Virus record (IMG/VR): IMGVR_UViG_3300044633_000899
Coordinates: 1 to 64,000 of that record
Strand: one strand, 5' to 3'
DNA: 64,000 nucleotides
A program made the position numbers and the translations under genes. Each line of letters opens with the position of its first letter. Within the stretch, counting starts at the first letter, position 1. Below the pieces are notes generated by a model. It saw nothing but the letters and a program-made list of their open reading frames with translations. It did no database searches and was not told where the DNA came from. Below, piece after piece: positions 22,642-39,415 of the stretch.

Positions 22642-23184
22642 ATGAAGTATTTATTATTTGTCTATCCCAATCATACATACTGGGAAGCCGATATTATGAA
22701 CCACGAAATAGGGGTTGAACTAACTAAAATTTCAAAAGAAAAAAAACCAGTTAATTTTATTTACAGCGAAACGGATTCGGTATTTAATTTCAATTCTGAT
22801 TTGTCGGAAGATGAGTTATTAATATACCTTGATACGTTAGATCCCATAATAGATGAGTTTACCTATATTTTAGTTAGAGGTGCTAAAAGTATCACGTCAA
22901 ATTTACCTAAACAACATTTTAAACAATTAACAAACCCTAAAAATAAGGGTAAAACAGATGGTGATATTAATTATTTCGCAACAAGTGACGGTGAATTAGA
23001 TCAAAACTATTATGAAACATTAGTGAATAACGCCATGGATTATTTTTTCAGTAAAAATCTAGGACAAAATGTTTGTACAATGACACTTGACGACCTATTA
23101 GATAAAATATCATTAGATGGTATTGATTCATTAACAACAGAAGAGAAAAATAAATTAGACGAATATTCAAAAACACAATTATGA
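22642..23184 (+). CDS. Hypothetical protein with a DUF6576-like C-terminus
   Basis: LDDLLDKISLDGIDSLTTEEKNKL. TACCTTTG -7 box at 22611-22618. Confidence 0.55.
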   Translation: MKYLLFVYPNHTYWEADIMNHEIGVELTKISKEKKPVNFIYSETDSVFNFNSDLSEDELLIYLDTLDPIIDEFTYILVRGAKSITSNLPKQHFKQLTNPKNKGKTDGDINYFATSDGELDQNYYETLVNNAMDYFFSKNLGQNVCTMTLDDLLDKISLDGIDSLTTEEKNKLDEYSKTQL

Positions 23185-23981
23185 GAGAAAAAACAAACGG
23201 AGCGCCGATTAATCAAGACGAAATTTATCACTACTTAAAGGACATTAGAAAAATAAAAGTAATGACACCTGAACGTGAGAAAGAATTAGCGATTAAAATG
23301 AAGTCAGAAGAAACGTCGTTGATTGAAAAGAAACGGATTGAAGAGGAGTTAATACAAGGTAACCTACGTTTTGTTATCACCGTCGCAAAACAATATCAAA
23401 ATCAAGGTCTTGAATTACCAGACTTAATTGCCGAAGGAAATCTTGGTTTAATGAAAGCAATTAAACATTTTGATTGGACAAAAGATCTTAGATTTATATC
23501 ATATGCTGTTTGGTGGGTTAAACAATCAATAATACAATCACTAAATGATAATTCAAGAACAATACGACTACCAGTTAATGTTGTCCAGGATTTACAACGA
23601 GCAAAAAAAGAAGTTGAACAGAACGGTAAAAAAATAGACGATAAATTCTCTGCATTACCATCAATTATCAACTTGGATATGAACATCAATGAAGAAGGTG
23701 ATACGTTAGTAGACATCATCCAGAACCATAACGCTGAAGCACCAGACGCATGTTTTGATACCAAAGATATTTTAAAACAAAAATTAATATCGTTATTGGA
23801 CGTATTGGATGATCGTGAAAAAGTTATTGTTGAAGATTACTTTGGTTTAAGTGGAACACCAAGAACTTTAGAAGACATTGGATCCGATTTTAACTTAACG
23901 AAAGAACGCGTTAGACAGGTAAAGGAAAAAAGTTTAAGAAAGTTAAGAAACCATTGTTCTGAATTATTTGATTATTTATAA
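23181..23981 (+). CDS. Sigma-70 family RNA polymerase sigma factor (Bacteroidota primary-sigma-like, no region 1.1)
   Basis: NLRFVITVAKQY, DLIAEGNLGL, RFISYAVWWVKQSI, RTIRLP and a region-4 HTH TLEDIG..LTKERVRQ. Confidence 0.92.
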   Translation: MREKTNGAPINQDEIYHYLKDIRKIKVMTPEREKELAIKMKSEETSLIEKKRIEEELIQGNLRFVITVAKQYQNQGLELPDLIAEGNLGLMKAIKHFDWTKDLRFISYAVWWVKQSIIQSLNDNSRTIRLPVNVVQDLQRAKKEVEQNGKKIDDKFSALPSIINLDMNINEEGDTLVDIIQNHNAEAPDACFDTKDILKQKLISLLDVLDDREKVIVEDYFGLSGTPRTLEDIGSDFNLTKERVRQVKEKSLRKLRNHCSELFDYL

Positions 23982-24073
23982 ATCAATATTGATTTGCTAA
24001 AATATGTTAAAAAAAATTTTTGTATTGAAAAATAACATACCTTTGTCTTGTTAATCATTTAAAAATATGTCTT

Positions 24074-24304
24074 ATGTTGAATTTATGTAAAAAGGTTGAA
24101 AAGGATTTCCAAATCCTTAAAAGTGGTGTTAAGAATGACACGCTTACAATCAACGAGATTGATACTATGAGTTTTGAATTACTTGGTATTTTAGGAACAT
24201 TGACACAAAACAATGTTGTTAACATCAACGGAAAGGAAACTGTTGATAAATACAAAGATCGTGTTTGGATGATTATTGAGAACGTAGGTTTATTGGCCGA
24301 CTAA
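24074..24304 (+). CDS. Hypothetical protein
   Basis: Has its own TACCTTTG box (24038-24045) and a downstream terminator. Confidence 0.6.
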   Translation: MLNLCKKVEKDFQILKSGVKNDTLTINEIDTMSFELLGILGTLTQNNVVNINGKETVDKYKDRVWMIIENVGLLAD

Positions 24305-24337
24305 ACTTGATAATTAATTTCTTGAAAATATTTGATT

Positions 24338-24364
24338 CCCACCGTAAATGGTGGGTTTTTTTTT
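24338..24364 (+). terminator. Intrinsic terminator
   Basis: CCCACC-gtaaat-GGTGGG followed by a T run. Confidence 0.85.
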
Positions 24365-24410
24365 GATCATATCATTTGACATTAAAAAACGTTTCACCTA
24401 TATTTCATCT

Positions 24411-25247
24411 ATGAATGTATTAAGTTTATTTGATGGATTATCTTGTGGTCAAATTGCCCTTAATAGAGTTGGAATTAAATACAACAAGTATTTTGCGTCA
24501 GAGATTGACGAATACGCGATTAAAGTAACCCAACAGAATTATCCAGGAACAACCCAAATTGGTGATGTAACACAAGTTAAAGGATCTGAGTTACCACAAA
24601 TTGATCTTATCATTGGTGGATCACCTTGTCAAGGATTTTCATTTGCGGGAAAAGGTTTAAATTTTGACGATCCAAGAAGTGCTTTATTCTTTGAATTTGT
24701 TAGATTAGTAAAAGAATGTAATCCGAAATACTTTTTACTTGAAAATGTTAAAATGAAAAAAGAACACGAAGATGTTATTACTGAACATATGGGGATTAAA
24801 CCTATTAAGATTAATAGTAAATTAGTATCAGCACAAAGTAGGGAAAGACTATATTGGACTAATATTCCGAACATAAAACAACCGGAAGATAAAGGTATTT
24901 TAGTTAAAGATATTTTAGATTATACCACCGAACATAAACTTTTAACTGAGAAGGGTATTAAATCACAAATCCATTATGCCAAAAATTACAAGTCAATAGG
25001 TAAATCACCAACATTAACTAGTGAATTGGCGCACGGTTGGGGTAAGAACATCACACCCAAATGTTATATTGAAATAAAAGCAATTACTGGTGAGGATAGG
25101 TTATTCTCACCATTAGAATGTGAACGATTACAAACAGTTCCAGATAATTACACTTCAGTTGTATCAAATACACAAAGATATAAAATGTTGGGGAATGGAT
25201 GGACAGTAGATGTAATCGCACATATATTTAAAAATATTGAAATATGA
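24411..25247 (+). CDS. DNA cytosine-C5 methyltransferase #1
   Basis: SLFDG (motif I), GSPCQ (IV), ENV (VI), QSRER (VIII) and GNG (X). True start ATG at 24411. Confidence 0.92.
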   Translation: MNVLSLFDGLSCGQIALNRVGIKYNKYFASEIDEYAIKVTQQNYPGTTQIGDVTQVKGSELPQIDLIIGGSPCQGFSFAGKGLNFDDPRSALFFEFVRLVKECNPKYFLLENVKMKKEHEDVITEHMGIKPIKINSKLVSAQSRERLYWTNIPNIKQPEDKGILVKDILDYTTEHKLLTEKGIKSQIHYAKNYKSIGKSPTLTSELAHGWGKNITPKCYIEIKAITGEDRLFSPLECERLQTVPDNYTSVVSNTQRYKMLGNGWTVDVIAHIFKNIEI

Positions 25248-26041
25248 ATGTATTAAGTTTATTTGACGGCATGTCAGTAGGACAAATTGCTCTTAATAGA
25301 GTTGGAATTAAGTATGACAAATATTTTGCATCAGAGATTGATAAATTTGCAATACAAGTAACACAATGTAATTATCCAGAAACAACCCAAATTGGGGATG
25401 TAACACAAGTGAAAGGTTCCGATCTGCCACAAATTGATCTTATTATTGGTGGATCACCTTGTCAAGGATTTTCATTTGCTGGTAAACAATTGAATTTTGA
25501 TGATCCAAGAAGTGCTTTATTCTTTGAGTTTGTTAGGTTAATTGAAGAATGTAAACCAAAGTATTTTCTACTTGAAAATGTTGTGATGAAAAAAGAATAT
25601 GAAGATATTATCACACAACATATGGGTGTAAAACCAATTCTCATAAATAGTAATCTTGTTTCAGCACAAAATAGAAAACGACTTTATTGGACCAACATTC
25701 CAAACATAGAACAACCAGAAGATTTAAATATAACTATGTCTGACATACTTTTAAGTGGTCAACATATACTTGTCTCAAAACAAAAAAAGGAACATAAACC
25801 TGGTGGTGATAAAACGGCAACATTACTTGCTAGAGACTATAAAGGATTTGGTAATCAACAAATGAGTGGTGCTATGGACAATGGTAATATTAGAATGTTT
25901 ACACCTGTAGAATATGAAAGATTACAAACTGTTCCAGATAATTACACCTCTGTCGTCTCAAACACCCAAAGATATAAAATGCTTGGAAATGGATGGACTG
26001 TTGATGTAATTGCACATATATTTAAAAATATAGAAATATGA
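25244..26041 (+). CDS. DNA cytosine-C5 methyltransferase #2
   Basis: Same motif set with a different TRD. ATGA overlap with #1. Confidence 0.92.
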   Translation: MNVLSLFDGMSVGQIALNRVGIKYDKYFASEIDKFAIQVTQCNYPETTQIGDVTQVKGSDLPQIDLIIGGSPCQGFSFAGKQLNFDDPRSALFFEFVRLIEECKPKYFLLENVVMKKEYEDIITQHMGVKPILINSNLVSAQNRKRLYWTNIPNIEQPEDLNITMSDILLSGQHILVSKQKKEHKPGGDKTATLLARDYKGFGNQQMSGAMDNGNIRMFTPVEYERLQTVPDNYTSVVSNTQRYKMLGNGWTVDVIAHIFKNIEI

Positions 26042-26946
26042 ATGTATTAAGTTTATTTGATGGGTTATCTTGCGGTCAAATCGCATTGAACCGTGCTGAT
26101 ATTAAATATGAAAATTATTTTGCTTCCGAAATTGACAAACACGCAATCAAGGTAACGCAACACAATTACCCAAACACAATACAACTTGGAAGTGTTACAG
26201 AAATTAAAGGGTCTGATTTACCACAAATTGATCTTATCATTGGTGGATCACCGTGTCAAGGATTTTCATTCGCTGGTAAACAATTAAACTTTGATGATCC
26301 ACGAAGTAAATTATTTTTTGAGTTTGTTAGACTAAAAAATGAGTTAAATCCAAAATACTTTTTACTTGAAAACGTTGTGATGAAACAAGAGTTCCAGGAT
26401 GTAATAACCGAGTATCTGGGTGTCAAACCAATTAAGATTAATAGTAAATTGGTATCAGCACAAACCAGAGAAAGATTATATTGGACTAATATACCAAATT
26501 TAAAACAACCAGAGGATTGTGGAATAACATTAAATGATATCTTGGAGGATATTGGTATAAATGGTGAATCTTTTGATAAAACAAAATTAAATAAAGCGAC
26601 AATATTAGGTAGAAGATTAGATTCTCGTGGTAAACGGATGGATTATGACAAAACAATCCCAATTACACAATGTTTGGAGGTTAGAGCGACAAATAGAGAT
26701 AAAAGTAATTGTTTAACAACGGTTGCAAAAGATAATGTTTTAACAACACTACCAATTGGTCGTCACGTTGACGCATTTAAAAAGAATTTACCATTCAGAT
26801 ATTTTACAATAAAAGAACATTGTAGACTACAAACCGTACCAGATACTTATTTTGATGGTGTTGCGAGTGAAAATCAAATTAGAAAAATGTTAGGAAATGG
26901 GTGGACAGTTGATGTTATTTCACATATTTTTAAAAATATTTTGTGA
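26038..26946 (+). CDS. DNA cytosine-C5 methyltransferase #3
   Basis: Same motif set with a longer TRD. ATGA overlap with #2. Confidence 0.92.
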   Translation: MNVLSLFDGLSCGQIALNRADIKYENYFASEIDKHAIKVTQHNYPNTIQLGSVTEIKGSDLPQIDLIIGGSPCQGFSFAGKQLNFDDPRSKLFFEFVRLKNELNPKYFLLENVVMKQEFQDVITEYLGVKPIKINSKLVSAQTRERLYWTNIPNLKQPEDCGITLNDILEDIGINGESFDKTKLNKATILGRRLDSRGKRMDYDKTIPITQCLEVRATNRDKSNCLTTVAKDNVLTTLPIGRHVDAFKKNLPFRYFTIKEHCRLQTVPDTYFDGVASENQIRKMLGNGWTVDVISHIFKNIL

Positions 26947-26948
26947 AA

Positions 26949-26982
26949 GTTGTTATTTATTCAAAATAAAGTGTTACATTTG
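26949..26982 (+). promoter_or_regulatory. Bacteroidota-type promoter (-7 TACATTTG) facing an ORF-free region
   Basis: TACATTTG at 26975-26982, GTTG about 22 nt upstream. Confidence 0.6.
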
Positions 26983-26987
26983 TACTG

Positions 26988-27296
26988 TTGGATTAATCAA
27001 CAACTTGTTTTTGGACTCCCAAGTATAGAAAAGGAGTTTATCACTTAACTCACGGGTTAGGTGGGGTGATTGAAAAAGATGGGAGATCCCCAAAATACAC
27101 AGAAACGTGGTAATTACCAGCCATCCCATATACGGCTAGATGGGCGTTAAGTCTTTACGAGATAAGGACAGAAAGGACGGGTTAAAAATCACAAATGAGC
27201 TCAAAGTGATGGTTTAAGTAGAAGTAGTTTGGGAAGAAACGAGCCCAGGCTGATAGGAAGATGGAAGACGATTAAGATACTAATATCCTATCCTAC
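26988..27296 (+). ncRNA. Candidate ~310-nt structured non-coding RNA
   Basis: GC-enriched and ORF-free in a dense genome, has its own promoter, and contains many hairpins with G-U pairs. Confidence 0.55.
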
Positions 27297-27719
27297 TTAA
27301 GCAACCCAAATTACAACTTGATTATCACCAACTCTAAAAGGATTTGAAGGTGATTCCCTAAATACAGTTGAAATTTCTAATCTCCAGTAAGTACCCCCAA
27401 TATGTATAGGGTTTATCGCTAACGCTAATTCCCGTTCAACTGATTTAACGACAAATGGTTTTTTGTTAAAAATTTCTCTATTAATAATTTTTTCGGCGAT
27501 ATCACCCTTAACTAGTGAAATAAGTTCTTTAATTTCTCTATTTTCAATAGGGTTCTGATTATAATCTGTTCCATCAAGTTCTGGTCTTGTAGATCTATCA
27601 AAAGCATGACTCCTCCTGTCAACTTCAAAATTAAATGAAACCTCAAGATTTGAAACAACTTGTGCTATTTTCTTTTCAAGTATTAAATGTTTTCTAATTG
27701 ACTCTCTAAGTAGTGACAT
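27297..27719 (-). CDS. Hypothetical (putative virion-internal) protein
   Basis: N-terminal MSLLRESIRKHLILE motif. Confidence 0.7.
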   Translation of the reverse strand: MSLLRESIRKHLILEKKIAQVVSNLEVSFNFEVDRRSHAFDRSTRPELDGTDYNQNPIENREIKELISLVKGDIAEKIINREIFNKKPFVVKSVERELALAINPIHIGGTYWRLEISTVFRESPSNPFRVGDNQVVIWVA

Positions 27720-27767
27720 ATCTATTAAACTTTATTATAAGTATTTATTTGTTATATTTTAGTCATT

Positions 27768-28853
27768 ATGAAAGAAAAATTTTTACCTTGGTTTATGTTA
27801 GTGTGTGCGTTAGGTCTATCTGGTACCGCAGCATACTATAGTGTTATTGGATTATCCGTTGTGTTTATTAGTGTTGCAACACCAGTTATTATTATGGGAT
27901 CATTCCTTGAGATCTCAAAAATCGCAATTGCGACCTATTTACACGACAAATGGAATGAAACATACGGAATGTTAAAGTTCTATATGACAACTGCCTTAAT
28001 TACATTATCAATAATTACATCAATTGGTATTTACGGACTTTTGAGTACTGGATTCCAGGGAAATATTGCCAAAATGGAAATCAATGAAAAACGAATTAAA
28101 AATATTGAGGTTAAGAAGAATCGGTTTATAGAAATAAAAGATGAATTAATTGATGAGAAAACAATATTAAATGGTGATATAACAAAATTGAGAGATGGAC
28201 TATCAAATAATACAACGACACAAACAGTTGACAGAAAAACAGGACAATTAATAACCAAGGCCAACGAGGGTAATAGGAAATCTTTTGAAACTCAATTACA
28301 ACAAGCACAAGTCAGACGAGACGATATTTCAAAAAAGATTGACAATTGTAACGACAGTATTACCAATTTGGATGTTCAAATCTTAGATATGGAATCAGCA
28401 GAAATTGAAGGTAGTGAACTTGGGGCTATAAAATACATTGGAGAAATATTAGATTGGGATATAAAAAAAGTTGCCAACTTATTTATATTGATATTAATTT
28501 TTGTTTTTGATCCGTTAGCGATAACATTAGTGATTGCAACAAATCAATTGTTTAAATCAAACAAGAAAAAGAATCCGACAACACAAAAAATTGAGACGGA
28601 TAATACCAAAATAGAAACAGAAAAAATTTGGGAAAAGGCAAACCAATTACGAGAAGAAGGTAAATTAGAACCACCAACCACAGAAGACATTATTAATGAA
28701 CCAACGGCTTTGGCCAATTCACAATACCGAAATGAATATAATATAGAACGGGAACCATTAAATCTGAACCAAGAGATAAATTGGGTTCAGACAAGTGAAG
28801 AAAATAATGGTGAGGTTAATCAAAACATAAAAAGATTGATATATAAGAAATAA
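27768..28853 (+). CDS. Membrane protein with a periplasmic coiled coil
   Basis: Three N-terminal TM helices, a long coiled coil, then a TM segment with IFVFDPLA. Confidence 0.7.
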   Translation: MKEKFLPWFMLVCALGLSGTAAYYSVIGLSVVFISVATPVIIMGSFLEISKIAIATYLHDKWNETYGMLKFYMTTALITLSIITSIGIYGLLSTGFQGNIAKMEINEKRIKNIEVKKNRFIEIKDELIDEKTILNGDITKLRDGLSNNTTTQTVDRKTGQLITKANEGNRKSFETQLQQAQVRRDDISKKIDNCNDSITNLDVQILDMESAEIEGSELGAIKYIGEILDWDIKKVANLFILILIFVFDPLAITLVIATNQLFKSNKKKNPTTQKIETDNTKIETEKIWEKANQLREEGKLEPPTTEDIINEPTALANSQYRNEYNIEREPLNLNQEINWVQTSEENNGEVNQNIKRLIYKK

Positions 28854-39184: not shown

Positions 39185-39196
39185 TTTTAAAAAATG

Positions 39197-39227
39197 TTTG
39201 GATATTAAGAAAATATTTATACCTTTG
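39197..39227 (+). promoter_or_regulatory. Bacteroidota-type promoter (TTTG-N19-TACCTTTG)
   Basis: Perfect consensus, with no ORF downstream before a terminator. Confidence 0.8.
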
Positions 39228-39230
39228 TAT

Positions 39231-39415
39231 AGTTAAATGATTAACGAAAAATCTTAACCGAAAAGACTGAGCATAAATCTTGAGTTTGTGTAGGAATACA
39301 TCTAAAGATGGTGGTTAAGTGGGTCTCTTGGATATACCCAACCAAGCGTAAGGTGACAACACGTGAGGGAAGGCTGTCACAACATTAACCCCCAAATTAT
39401 TGGGGGTTTTGTTTT
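39231..39415 (+). ncRNA. Candidate ~180-nt structured small RNA
   Basis: Bounded by a promoter and a terminator. Has a CTTAACC/GGTTAAG long-range helix and several hairpins. Confidence 0.65.

What the first reader, a model, noticed from the sequence alone, without database searches (positions are those of the whole stretch)
26949..27296. Promoter-driven, GC-rich ~310-nt structured RNA candidate after the methyltransferase trio
This is the largest ORF-free gap in the window, preceded by a TACATTTG promoter box and visibly more GC-rich than the genome. Consecutive helices include GGACTCC/GGAGTTT (27013-27039), ATCACTTAACT-cacg-GGTTAGGTGG (27040-27064), GTCTTT/AAGGAC (27151-27169), ATCAC/GTGAT (27188-27210), TTTGGG/CCCAGG (27228-27249) and GATAGGA/TCCTATC (27252-27292). 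Many use G-U pairs, which suggests selection on RNA structure. I do not recognise the family.
Basis: partly seen in the sequence, partly recalled or inferred. Interest (0 to 1): 0.65.

Follow-up and report, generated by a model that had tools for sequence, protein, structure and literature searches.

The report
Two fused phage small-RNA genes
The gene-free gap in this lake jumbo-phage genome holds two different structured small-RNA genes, neither in Rfam, joined head to tail behind one promoter; what they do is unknown.

Summary
Window 26947-27296 is the largest stretch without an ORF of 60 aa or more, and its GC (0.40 against 0.30) is in the top 0.4% of 320-nt windows. A Bacteroidota-type -7 box, TACATTTG, sits at 26975-26982.

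The region is not one RNA family but two.
- **Module A (27179 to about 27307).** It is a three-way junction with a 22-nt loop invariant in all members found. I found about 30 distinct versions in lake phage contigs, including unrelated T4-like phages. 28 of 29 pairs show compensatory change.
- **Module D (26987-27178).** It is a separate small RNA. In two other phage lineages it stands alone, with its own promoter and terminator.

In this phage, D's terminator is cut after its 5' half and joined directly to A, which has lost its own promoter. One RNA of about 320 nt is therefore expected.

Rfam 15, tRNA and tmRNA searches, and ORF tests are all negative. Related phages carry other RNAs (types B and C, or D alone) at the same position, so this is an exchangeable RNA-cassette site. 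Transcription, host and function are not shown. My best guess is an early, trans-acting RNA that binds a conserved host factor.

The parts
26975..26982 (+). -7 promoter box TACATTTG (Bacteroidota sigma-A consensus TAnnTTTG). The predicted start is near 26987. The -33 element is weak here (GTTG at 26949-26952).
   Evidence: Sequence. The consensus and its -12 to -5 position come from PMC9723704. A TAnnTTTG box, mostly with TTTG 19-20 nt upstream, precedes the RNA in more than 20 orthologous loci and in the stand-alone D genes.
26987..27178 (+). Module D, a structured small RNA. It has a 5' hairpin (26987-27002) and helices at 27013-27039, 27041-27064 and 27065-27118. The last of these encloses hairpins 27080-27092 and 27098-27109. 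Further helices lie at 27125-27144 and 27151-27169.
   Evidence: Stand-alone homologues L149:2789-2996(-) and L152:4293-4504(+) have their own promoter and terminator. nhmmer gives E = 1e-67 to 1e-71. 95.8% of cells are paired against 55% or less when the partners are slid. Six pairs changed on both sides, against one or none when slid.
27175..27183 (+). Fusion joint. GGACGG (27175-27180) is the 5' half of D's terminator stem. It overlaps by GG with GGGTT (27179-27183), the start of module A. D's terminator loop, 3' half and U-run are absent, as are A's promoter and leader.
   Evidence: Alignment A12 of the window with D ends plus terminators (L152, L149) and with promoters plus A starts (L110, L124).
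27179..27307 (+). Module A, a three-way-junction RNA. P0 is 27179-27183 with 27303-27307. P1 is 27188-27192 with 27206-27210. P2 is 27214-27221 with 27293-27300. P3 is 27226-27233 with 27244-27251. P4 is 27252-27258 with 27286-27292. The 3' end is undefined.
   Evidence: Covariance models R1 and R2 score 130-147 bits here. In 31 distinct sequences aligned by MAFFT, 28 of 29 pairs show a change on both sides, and 83.9% of cells are paired against 50% or less when slid, with 0 of 500 shuffles as good.
27259..27280 (+). Invariant apical loop of P4, AGATGGAAGACGATT(A/C/T)AGATAC. It is the most conserved part of module A.
   Evidence: Columns are invariant in all 31 sequences, apart from one purine/C position and the M position, while the flanking stems change completely.
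27297..27719 (-). Convergent 140-aa gene ('p140') of unknown function. Its stop codon lies inside P2, and its last codons (I-W-V) are the complement of the 3' strand of P0.
   Evidence: There is no Pfam, PHROG or PADLOC match.
24348..26946 (+). Three tandem C5 cytosine DNA methyltransferase genes, upstream context. A sigma-70-like factor gene lies at 23181-23981.
   Evidence: Pfam PF00145 with E = 1e-43 to 1e-51. Sigma70 regions r2 and r4.

Best explanation
WHAT IT IS (shown). The gap holds two unrelated phage small-RNA genes fused into one transcription unit on the + strand. Module D (26987-27178) is a multi-hairpin RNA that elsewhere is a stand-alone gene with its own promoter and intrinsic terminator. 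Module A (27179 to about 27307) is a three-way junction. Its stems covary freely, while its 22-nt P4 loop, its P3 loop and its junction stay almost unchanged across unrelated lake phages. In this lineage a deletion removed the 3' half of D's terminator together with A's promoter and leader. The only promoter left is the sigma-A-type box at 26975-26982.

HOW IT WORKS (inferred). The host RNA polymerase of a Bacteroidota host starts near 26987 early in infection. It reads through the crippled terminator and makes a two-part RNA of about 320 nt, which may or may not be cut into D and A. Module A then acts in trans by presenting its invariant single-stranded loop to a conserved host component, most likely a protein, as a decoy, sponge or RNP partner. 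It does not act by pairing with phage mRNAs. The site is an accessory hot spot. Related phages carry RNA types B, C, D alone or A alone there, next to anti-restriction methyltransferases. That fits a host-takeover or counter-defence role. My odds: real structured RNA about 0.93; D-A fusion about 0.85; trans-acting binder of a conserved host factor about 0.35.
For: - Covariation in A: 28 of 29 pairs changed on both sides, 0 of 500 shuffles as good, slid controls 50% or less paired.
- Distribution of A: about 30 distinct members from IMG/VR and metagenomes. They include T4-like phages, where the RNA sits beside the gp23 capsid gene and ends in an intrinsic terminator.
- Conservation of A: the RNA is 77-87% identical between phages whose flanking p140 is only about 34% identical.
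- D as its own gene: it has its own promoter and terminator in L149 and L152, and L152 is the same syntenic position. The fusion joint is seen. D pairs are 95.8% kept, with six compensatory.
- Promoter: the box is conserved at a fixed distance in orthologous loci and matches the Bacteroidota sigma-A consensus. No other box lies between D and A.
- Strand: frequent G-U pairs, and the + strand folds better.
- Not coding: stops in all six frames. The 51-aa minus-strand ORF has no homologue. Against L149 its changed codons are 12 nonsynonymous to 4 synonymous. L152 has a stop at codon 3, and L149 a stop near the C-terminus that shortens the frame.
- No phage partner: the members share no neighbouring protein.
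- Exchangeable position: types A, B, C and D occupy it in different relatives.
Against: - Transcription is not shown. The one metatranscriptome holding this phage gave a 387-nt contig over 26770-27144 at 94% identity. The whole locus was thinly covered there, so DNA carry-over cannot be excluded, and the A core was not covered.
- The host is inferred only from the promoter type. The two-box promoter pattern is not significantly enriched in the window (10 found against 5.9 expected), and the -33 element at this locus is poor.
- No binding partner or target was identified.
- The 3' end of A is undefined, because no + strand terminator was found.
- D rests on only three distinct sequences, and its folding energy alone is not significant.
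Confidence: 0.5

Rival explanations
1. Base-pairing regulator. The RNA acts as a classical trans- or cis-antisense small RNA. In particular, its 3' part overlaps the end of the convergent p140 mRNA and controls its stability or termination.
For: The 3' strands of P2 and P0 cover the stop codon and last codons of p140. In short-leader relatives the 5' leader (ACAAU..GGGUU) is complementary to AACCC..AUUGU inside p140. There is no + strand terminator, so transcription may run antisense into p140.
Against: Module A occurs without any p140 homologue in T4-like phages and in L113, L114 and L122. Types B and C, and D alone, occupy the same position but stop before p140, or face a different gene as in L152. 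The most conserved part is a loop far from the overlap. It shows no better match or complement to E. coli rRNAs than shuffled loops do.
Confidence: 0.15
2. Cis element only. The structures are 3'-UTR stabilisers or bidirectional terminators for the methyltransferase operon and p140, not an RNA gene.
For: The region lies between convergent genes. A terminator-like hairpin with a U-run on the minus strand lies at 27092-27080, inside D. The metatranscriptome contig runs from the methyltransferase gene into D.
Against: A dedicated promoter box sits at a fixed distance in more than 20 loci. D and divergent A members are stand-alone units with promoter and terminator in other contexts. A 22-nt invariant loop and a three-way junction are far more than a terminator needs.
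Confidence: 0.07
3. Catalytic or ligand-binding RNA. The invariant junction and loops of A form a ribozyme core or aptamer, for example one that cuts the fused precursor into D and A.
For: The pattern is typical of ribozymes and riboswitch aptamers: invariant unpaired nucleotides with freely covarying stems. A fusion transcript would benefit from processing.
Against: There is no match to any ribozyme or riboswitch model in Rfam 15, even at E up to 10. No gene lies downstream on the same strand for a riboswitch to control. No internal complementarity was found between the conserved loops (inspection of A7).
Confidence: 0.08
4. A small protein gene or gene remnant explains the region. Candidates are the 51-aa hydrophobic ORF on the minus strand (27129-26974) or a 23-aa ORF on the plus strand.
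For: An open minus-strand frame of about 40 codons can be read in all three D versions.
Against: There is no homologue among 5.8 billion protein clusters. Against L149 the changed codons are 12 nonsynonymous to 4 synonymous, with radical changes. L152 has a stop at codon 3 and L149 a stop that shortens the C-terminus. Changes are compensatory in RNA helices instead. tblastx finds no related coding sequence.
Confidence: 0.03

Closest known systems
phi29-type packaging RNA (pRNA, Rfam RF00044)
   Same: Phage-encoded and promoter-driven, about 120-170 nt, built on a three-way junction with two functional hairpin loops and a closing helix. One group of module A members lies beside the capsid gene.
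   Different: There is no match to the Rfam model. The two loops are not complementary to each other, whereas pRNA rings form by loop-loop pairing (established knowledge). The phages here are jumbo and T4-like, not phi29-like. No link to a packaging motor was seen.
Phage T4 stable RNAs C and D (small non-tRNA RNAs co-transcribed and processed with tRNAs; from my own knowledge, not checked here)
   Same: Small, stable, structured phage RNAs of unknown function, made as parts of multi-RNA precursors. This resembles the D-A fusion and the other 5' modules fused to A in L085 and L137.
   Different: This locus has no tRNA genes, and the whole 296-kb genome has one tRNA.
6S RNA, including 6S-Flavo (RF01685)
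   Same: A small RNA that works by binding a conserved host machine, the sigma-A holoenzyme. In the jumbo-phage group the position lies just downstream of a phage sigma-70-like gene.
   Different: There is no Rfam match. The shape is a three-way junction, not a long rod with a central bubble. T4-like members are not next to a sigma gene.
Candidate structured RNAs mined from IMG/VR (PMC10690425, over 10,000 motifs)
   Same: Same data source and same kind of object: an intergenic, covarying phage RNA motif without a known function.
   Different: I could not check whether A or D is among them, because no supplementary files are held. That paper does not discuss fused RNA genes or exchangeable cassette sites in what I read.
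Type III toxin-antitoxin RNA antitoxins (ToxI and similar)
   Same: A structured RNA gene beside a small protein whose model weakly resembles endoribonuclease toxins.
   Different: There are no tandem repeats. The orientation is convergent rather than co-directional. The RNA occurs without p140. The RNase-like fold of p140 is below the noise level.

Membership tests
Any Rfam 15 family | Covariance-model score at or above the family's gathering threshold | tested here: not met
   There were 0 hits in the whole window at gathering thresholds. Only chance-level hits (E 7.6-9.4, far below gathering) appeared in 26700-27900. Relatives carrying types B, C and other leaders gave none either.
tRNA / tmRNA | Cloverleaf or tmRNA architecture detected by ARAGORN | tested here: not met
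   No gene in the window. One tRNA-Glu in the whole genome, at 104846-104918.
phi29 pRNA (RF00044) | Match to the family model, and intermolecular loop-loop complementarity | tested here: not met
   No Rfam hit. The P3 and P4 loop consensus sequences show no complementarity (inspection).
Riboswitch / cis-regulatory leader | Lies in the 5' UTR of a regulated gene on the same strand | tested here: not met
   The next gene is convergent (27297-27719, minus strand). Divergent members are followed directly by a terminator.
Type III TA antitoxin RNA | Tandem direct repeats upstream of, and co-directional with, an endoRNase toxin gene | tested here: not met
   No tandem repeats. Convergent orientation.
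New family 'module A' (defined here) | Three-way junction P2-P3-P4 with the invariant P4 loop AGAUGGAAGACGAUUNAGAUAC | tested here: met
   Window 27176-27300 scores 146.6 bits with R1 and 130.4 bits with R2. It is the only copy in the 296-kb genome.
New family 'module D' (defined here) | Full-length similarity and shared helices with the stand-alone genes in L149 and L152 | tested here: met
   nhmmer E = 9e-67 over profile positions 1-199. 95.8% of pairs are kept. The terminator is absent from the window copy.
Expressed RNA gene | A discrete transcript with defined 5' and 3' ends | tested here: inconclusive
   One metatranscriptome contig covers 26770-27144, but coverage is thin across the whole locus and only contigs are held.

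The most novel reading that the evidence does not exclude
Lake jumbo phages with Bacteroidota-type promoters keep a repertoire of interchangeable, self-contained structured-RNA cassettes (types A, B, C, D and more). They sit in accessory hot spots next to anti-restriction methyltransferases and are swapped and fused much as protein 'morons' are. These RNAs would be RNA-based host-takeover or counter-defence effectors. Module A's invariant loop would then be a decoy for a conserved host RNA-binding immune or housekeeping protein.
Probability: 0.15. Interest if true: 0.85.

Novelty: new variant of a known kind. Interest (0 to 1): 0.58.

Why it matters
Phage accessory regions are usually read protein by protein. 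Here the fixed occupant of a variable position is an RNA gene.
- At least four unrelated structured RNAs alternate at that position.
- One of them (A) is shared by phages that otherwise have nothing in common.
- Two of them have been welded into a single transcript.

This gives a concrete, testable system for two questions: what structured small RNAs do for large virulent phages, and how RNA genes move and recombine. The 22-nt invariant loop is a ready handle for pull-downs and mutagenesis.

On the cautious side, orphan covarying phage RNA motifs are found by the thousand. Without a function, this remains a well-supported catalogue entry rather than a new mechanism.

Tried and rejected
- **Known RNA families.** Rfam gave nothing at gathering thresholds or at E up to 10, on the window and on relatives.
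- **tRNA or tmRNA.** None.
- **Hidden gene read with another genetic code.** All three stop codons occur in all six frames, and there is no suppressor tRNA.
- **The 51-aa minus-strand ORF.** No homologue. The substitution pattern is non-coding, with stops in relatives. tblastx found nothing.
- **The 5' part as a degenerate copy of module A.** Best score 6.6 bits at E = 0.33.
- **The 5' part as lineage-specific junk.** I held this view until. It was overturned by the stand-alone D genes.
- **rRNA mimicry or pairing.** The invariant loop looks like the 16S 790 loop (GAUU-AGAUAC). Tested on E. coli 16S, 23S and 5S, it scores no better than shuffled loops, with 54% of shuffles as good.
- **Host-encoded or prophage homologues.** A scan of one genome per GTDB species for the loop motif gave one chance hit in a Pseudomonadota MAG, with no flanking stems. 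BLAST against cultured-phage records gave nothing.
- **Chance pattern matches.** Eight of the 38 metagenome pattern matches are not confirmed members. Seven are chance hits in sequence without the RNA's stems; in five, the motif's frame reads DG(K/R)RFRY. The eighth (L119) gave only a weak motif hit (E = 0.6) in sequence without the stems.
- **Expression from public data.** Inconclusive.
- **p140 as a cognate RNase.** Fold matches to RelE, ParE, BrnT, colicin E5/D and T4 RegB are only Foldseek E = 0.07-0.9 and VIA Z = 4-5.4, below the tool's noise level. A profile search against PDB sequences found nothing relevant, and PADLOC nothing.
- **Tandem repeats.** None.
- **Two-box promoter pattern in the window.** Not significantly enriched.

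Full report
**Setting**
The window is the first 64 kb of a 296,330-bp IMG/VR phage record with 30% GC, rated complete by CheckV. Runs holding it are lake-water metagenomes. The finding lies between convergent genes.
- Upstream on the + strand are a sigma-70-like factor (23181-23981), a 76-aa ORF and three tandem C5 DNA methyltransferases (24348-26946).
- Downstream on the - strand is a 140-aa gene, 'p140' (27297-27719), with no Pfam, PHROG or PADLOC match.
- Beyond it on the + strand are a 361-aa gene and an amidase.

**Checking the observation**
- The 350-nt gap 26947-27296 is the largest stretch of the window free of ORFs of 60 aa or more.
- Its GC of 0.40 is in the 99.7th percentile of 320-nt windows.
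- TACATTTG lies at 26975-26982.
- The + strand folds better than shuffles (z = -2.1). The - strand does not (z = -0.6).
- All three stop codons occur in all six frames, so no recoded gene is hidden there.
- Rfam 15 gives nothing at gathering thresholds and only chance-level hits at E up to 10.
- ARAGORN finds no tRNA or tmRNA.

**The 3' third is a widespread RNA family (module A)**
I fetched 80 related loci through the neighbouring 361-aa protein. BLAST showed that only window 27179-27300 is conserved in more distant relatives, at 77-87% identity. The adjacent p140 is only about 34% identical in the same contigs.

Seven sequences already gave five compensatory pairs. A covariance model (R1) and scans for the conserved loop motif recovered about 30 distinct members.

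On a structure-blind MAFFT alignment of 31 sequences:
- 28 of 29 pairs show changes on both sides.
- 83.9% of cells are paired, against 50% or less when the partners are slid.
- No shuffle out of 500 reaches the observed values.

The architecture in the window is:
- a 5' hairpin, P1 (27188-27210);
- a closing stem, P2 (27214-27221 with 27293-27300);
- P3 (27226-27251);
- P4 (27252-27292).

The apical loop of P4 (27259-27280) is invariant in every member. The P3 loop and the P2/P3 junction (AGAAGU) are nearly so. Many pairs are G-U, which fixes the strand.

An outer stem, P0 (GGGUU 27179-27183 with AACCC 27303-27307), is likely. In short-leader relatives it extends to ACAAU/AUUGU. It persists in L113, where no p140 follows. 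With P0 included, module A folds with z = -3.6 and no shuffle out of 200 does as well.

Divergent members sit in T4-like phages, beside the gp23 capsid gene or elsewhere. They have different 5' hairpins and a clear intrinsic terminator. No p140 homologue is near them. One member (L108) lacks P0 and P1, so the three-way junction is the minimal unit.

The family is single-copy in this genome. A scan of one genome per GTDB species gave only a chance hit.

**The promoter**
In more than 20 orthologous loci a TTTG-N19/20-TAnnTTTG pair lies about 20 nt upstream of GGGUU. TAnnTTTG at -12 to -5 is the sigma-A box of Flavobacterium and Bacteroides (PMC9723704; PMC7366714 is listed). This is the only evidence for a Bacteroidota host. 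It implies transcription by the unmodified host polymerase, hence probably early in infection.

In the window, the box at 26975-26982 predicts a start near 26987. The -33 element is poor here. The two-box pattern is not significantly enriched window-wide.

**The 5' two thirds are a second RNA gene (module D), fused to A**
At first the 190 nt between the promoter and module A looked lineage-specific. Only near-identical contigs carried it. Its fold energy was unremarkable (z = -1.45).

A weak similarity to another small-RNA locus of a 97% relative gave a motif. That motif, and a second scan, then found full-length homologues:
- L149:2789-2996 (-);
- L152:4293-4504 (+), which is identical in L153-L155.

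There D is a stand-alone gene. It has a canonical promoter, a body of about 185 nt and a strong terminator (GGACGG-loop-CCGUCC followed by a U-run).

L152 is the same syntenic position. Its gene order is DUF6576 protein, sigma factor (84% identical), methyltransferase (84%), D, a different convergent gene, then the 361-aa homologue and the amidase.

Across the three versions:
- 95.8% of 56 predicted pairs are kept, against 55% or less when slid.
- Six pairs changed on both sides, against one or none when slid.

This structure was derived from the same three sequences, so the support is real but thin.

Alignment A12 shows the joint. The window follows D through GGACGG (27175-27180). It then continues as module A from GGGTT (27179-27183). 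D's terminator loop, 3' half and U-run are missing, and so are A's promoter and leader. No other promoter box lies between them, so A can only be made by read-through from D's promoter.

Two other lineages (L085, L137) also carry different 87-95-nt modules between the promoter and A. Fusion of a 5' module to A has therefore happened repeatedly.

**No ORF explains the region**
The 51-aa hydrophobic ORF on the minus strand (27129-26974) has no homologue among 5.8 billion protein clusters.

Compared with the D homologues:
- Against L149 its changed codons are 12 nonsynonymous to 4 synonymous, with changes such as L to P and H to L.
- L152 has a stop at codon 3.
- L149 has a stop near the C-terminus that shortens the frame.

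The same substitutions are compensatory in the RNA helices.

**An exchangeable RNA position**
Relatives that lack A carry another GC-rich RNA at the same place.
- **Type B** has a 5' H-type pseudoknot, (A/U)GGGU with ACCC(U/A) interleaved with CCGAG/CUCGG. It also has further hairpins and a terminator, and nine pairs show compensatory change.
- **Type C** is a short small RNA.
- Some relatives carry both B and C.

None matches Rfam. The RNA type does not follow the phylogeny of the flanking proteins. Together with the methyltransferases and small ORFs that come and go here, this marks an accessory hot spot.

**Function**
Nothing here shows function. I tested and rejected rRNA mimicry or pairing by the invariant loop and kinship of D with A.

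The p140 model (pLDDT 81.5) gives only sub-threshold matches. They are dominated by RelE/ParE-type and other small RNase toxins and T4 RegB. I record this as a lead only.

The one metatranscriptome holding the phage is inconclusive.

My working model rests on three observations:
- an invariant 22-nt loop shared by phages with no common neighbouring gene;
- a host-type promoter;
- an accessory position.

The model is therefore an early, trans-acting RNA that binds a conserved host factor. I give it about 0.35. Antisense action on p140, a purely cis role, a ribozyme or aptamer, and a small ORF are the rivals, in that order.

**Novelty**
Neither module is in Rfam 15. I could not check whether they are among the more than 10,000 unnamed motifs of PMC10690425.

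The kind of object, an orphan structured phage RNA, is known. The new parts are the two families, their fusion and the cassette-like exchange at one position.

Noticed in passing
window 39185-39415 (+): A second promoter-driven small-RNA candidate. It has TTTG-N19-TACCTTTG at 39197-39227 and a 5' hairpin, then a GC-enriched body of about 150 nt and an intrinsic terminator (CCCCC-loop-GGGGG followed by a U-run) near 39385-39412. In a 97% relative (L085:1560-1960, minus strand) the same promoter drives a different body, whose centre is related to module D (nhmmer E = 1.4e-10).
   Followed up: partly
window 27297-27719 (-): The AlphaFold model of p140 (pLDDT 81.5) gives only sub-threshold fold matches. 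They are dominated by RelE/ParE/YoeB/HigB, BrnT, colicin E5/D, CdiA-CT and T4 RegB endoribonucleases (Foldseek E = 0.07-0.9, VIA Z = 4-5.4). Invariant residues are E15, K16, H38, R42, S93 and Q134. This is a possible small RNase fold, not established.
   Followed up: partly
L063:3398-3527, L072:2739-2868, L041:3371-3500 and about 20 other related loci: 'Type B' RNA at the same syntenic position. It has a 5' H-type pseudoknot, further hairpins and a terminator, and nine pairs show compensatory change. It has no Rfam match and looks aptamer-like.
   Followed up: partly
L027:3440-3535, L049:3418-3534, L050:3441-3535; L082:2808-3061 (B plus C): 'Type C', a short small RNA with promoter and terminator, at the same position. 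L082 carries B and C in tandem.
   Followed up: no
L085:13296-13400 (-) and L137:9721-9830 (-): Two further, mutually unrelated 5' modules of about 87 and 95 nt lie between the promoter and module A. No homologues were found among the loci held. L137's module looks pseudoknotted (GGUGG..CCACC around GGUAUC..GAUACC).
   Followed up: partly
L041:3061-3370 and L037: A roughly 85-codon ORF is inserted between the promoter and a type B RNA. The RNA there would be the 3' end of an mRNA.
   Followed up: no
window 27080-27092 (-): One hairpin of module D, read on the minus strand, is followed by a U-run and scores as a terminator about 205 nt downstream of the p140 stop. It could end p140 transcripts. 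The flanking GAAAAAGA is conserved in all D versions.
   Followed up: no
window 23181-26946 (+): A phage sigma-70-like factor is followed by three tandem C5 cytosine methyltransferase paralogues. In many relatives the RNA gene follows the sigma gene directly.
   Followed up: partly
G000 outside the window: 103195-105996 and 140536-146465: Seven more ORF-free gaps of at least 200 nt contain 100-nt stretches of 43-56% GC. One holds the genome's single tRNA-Glu. These are possible further RNA genes.
   Followed up: no
L129:1207-1401 versus window 26986-27180: The single difference in this 99.5% copy of D (a T to C change in GGTAATTACC, about 27113-27114) turns a predicted G-U pair of the 27065-27118 stem into G-C.
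   Followed up: no
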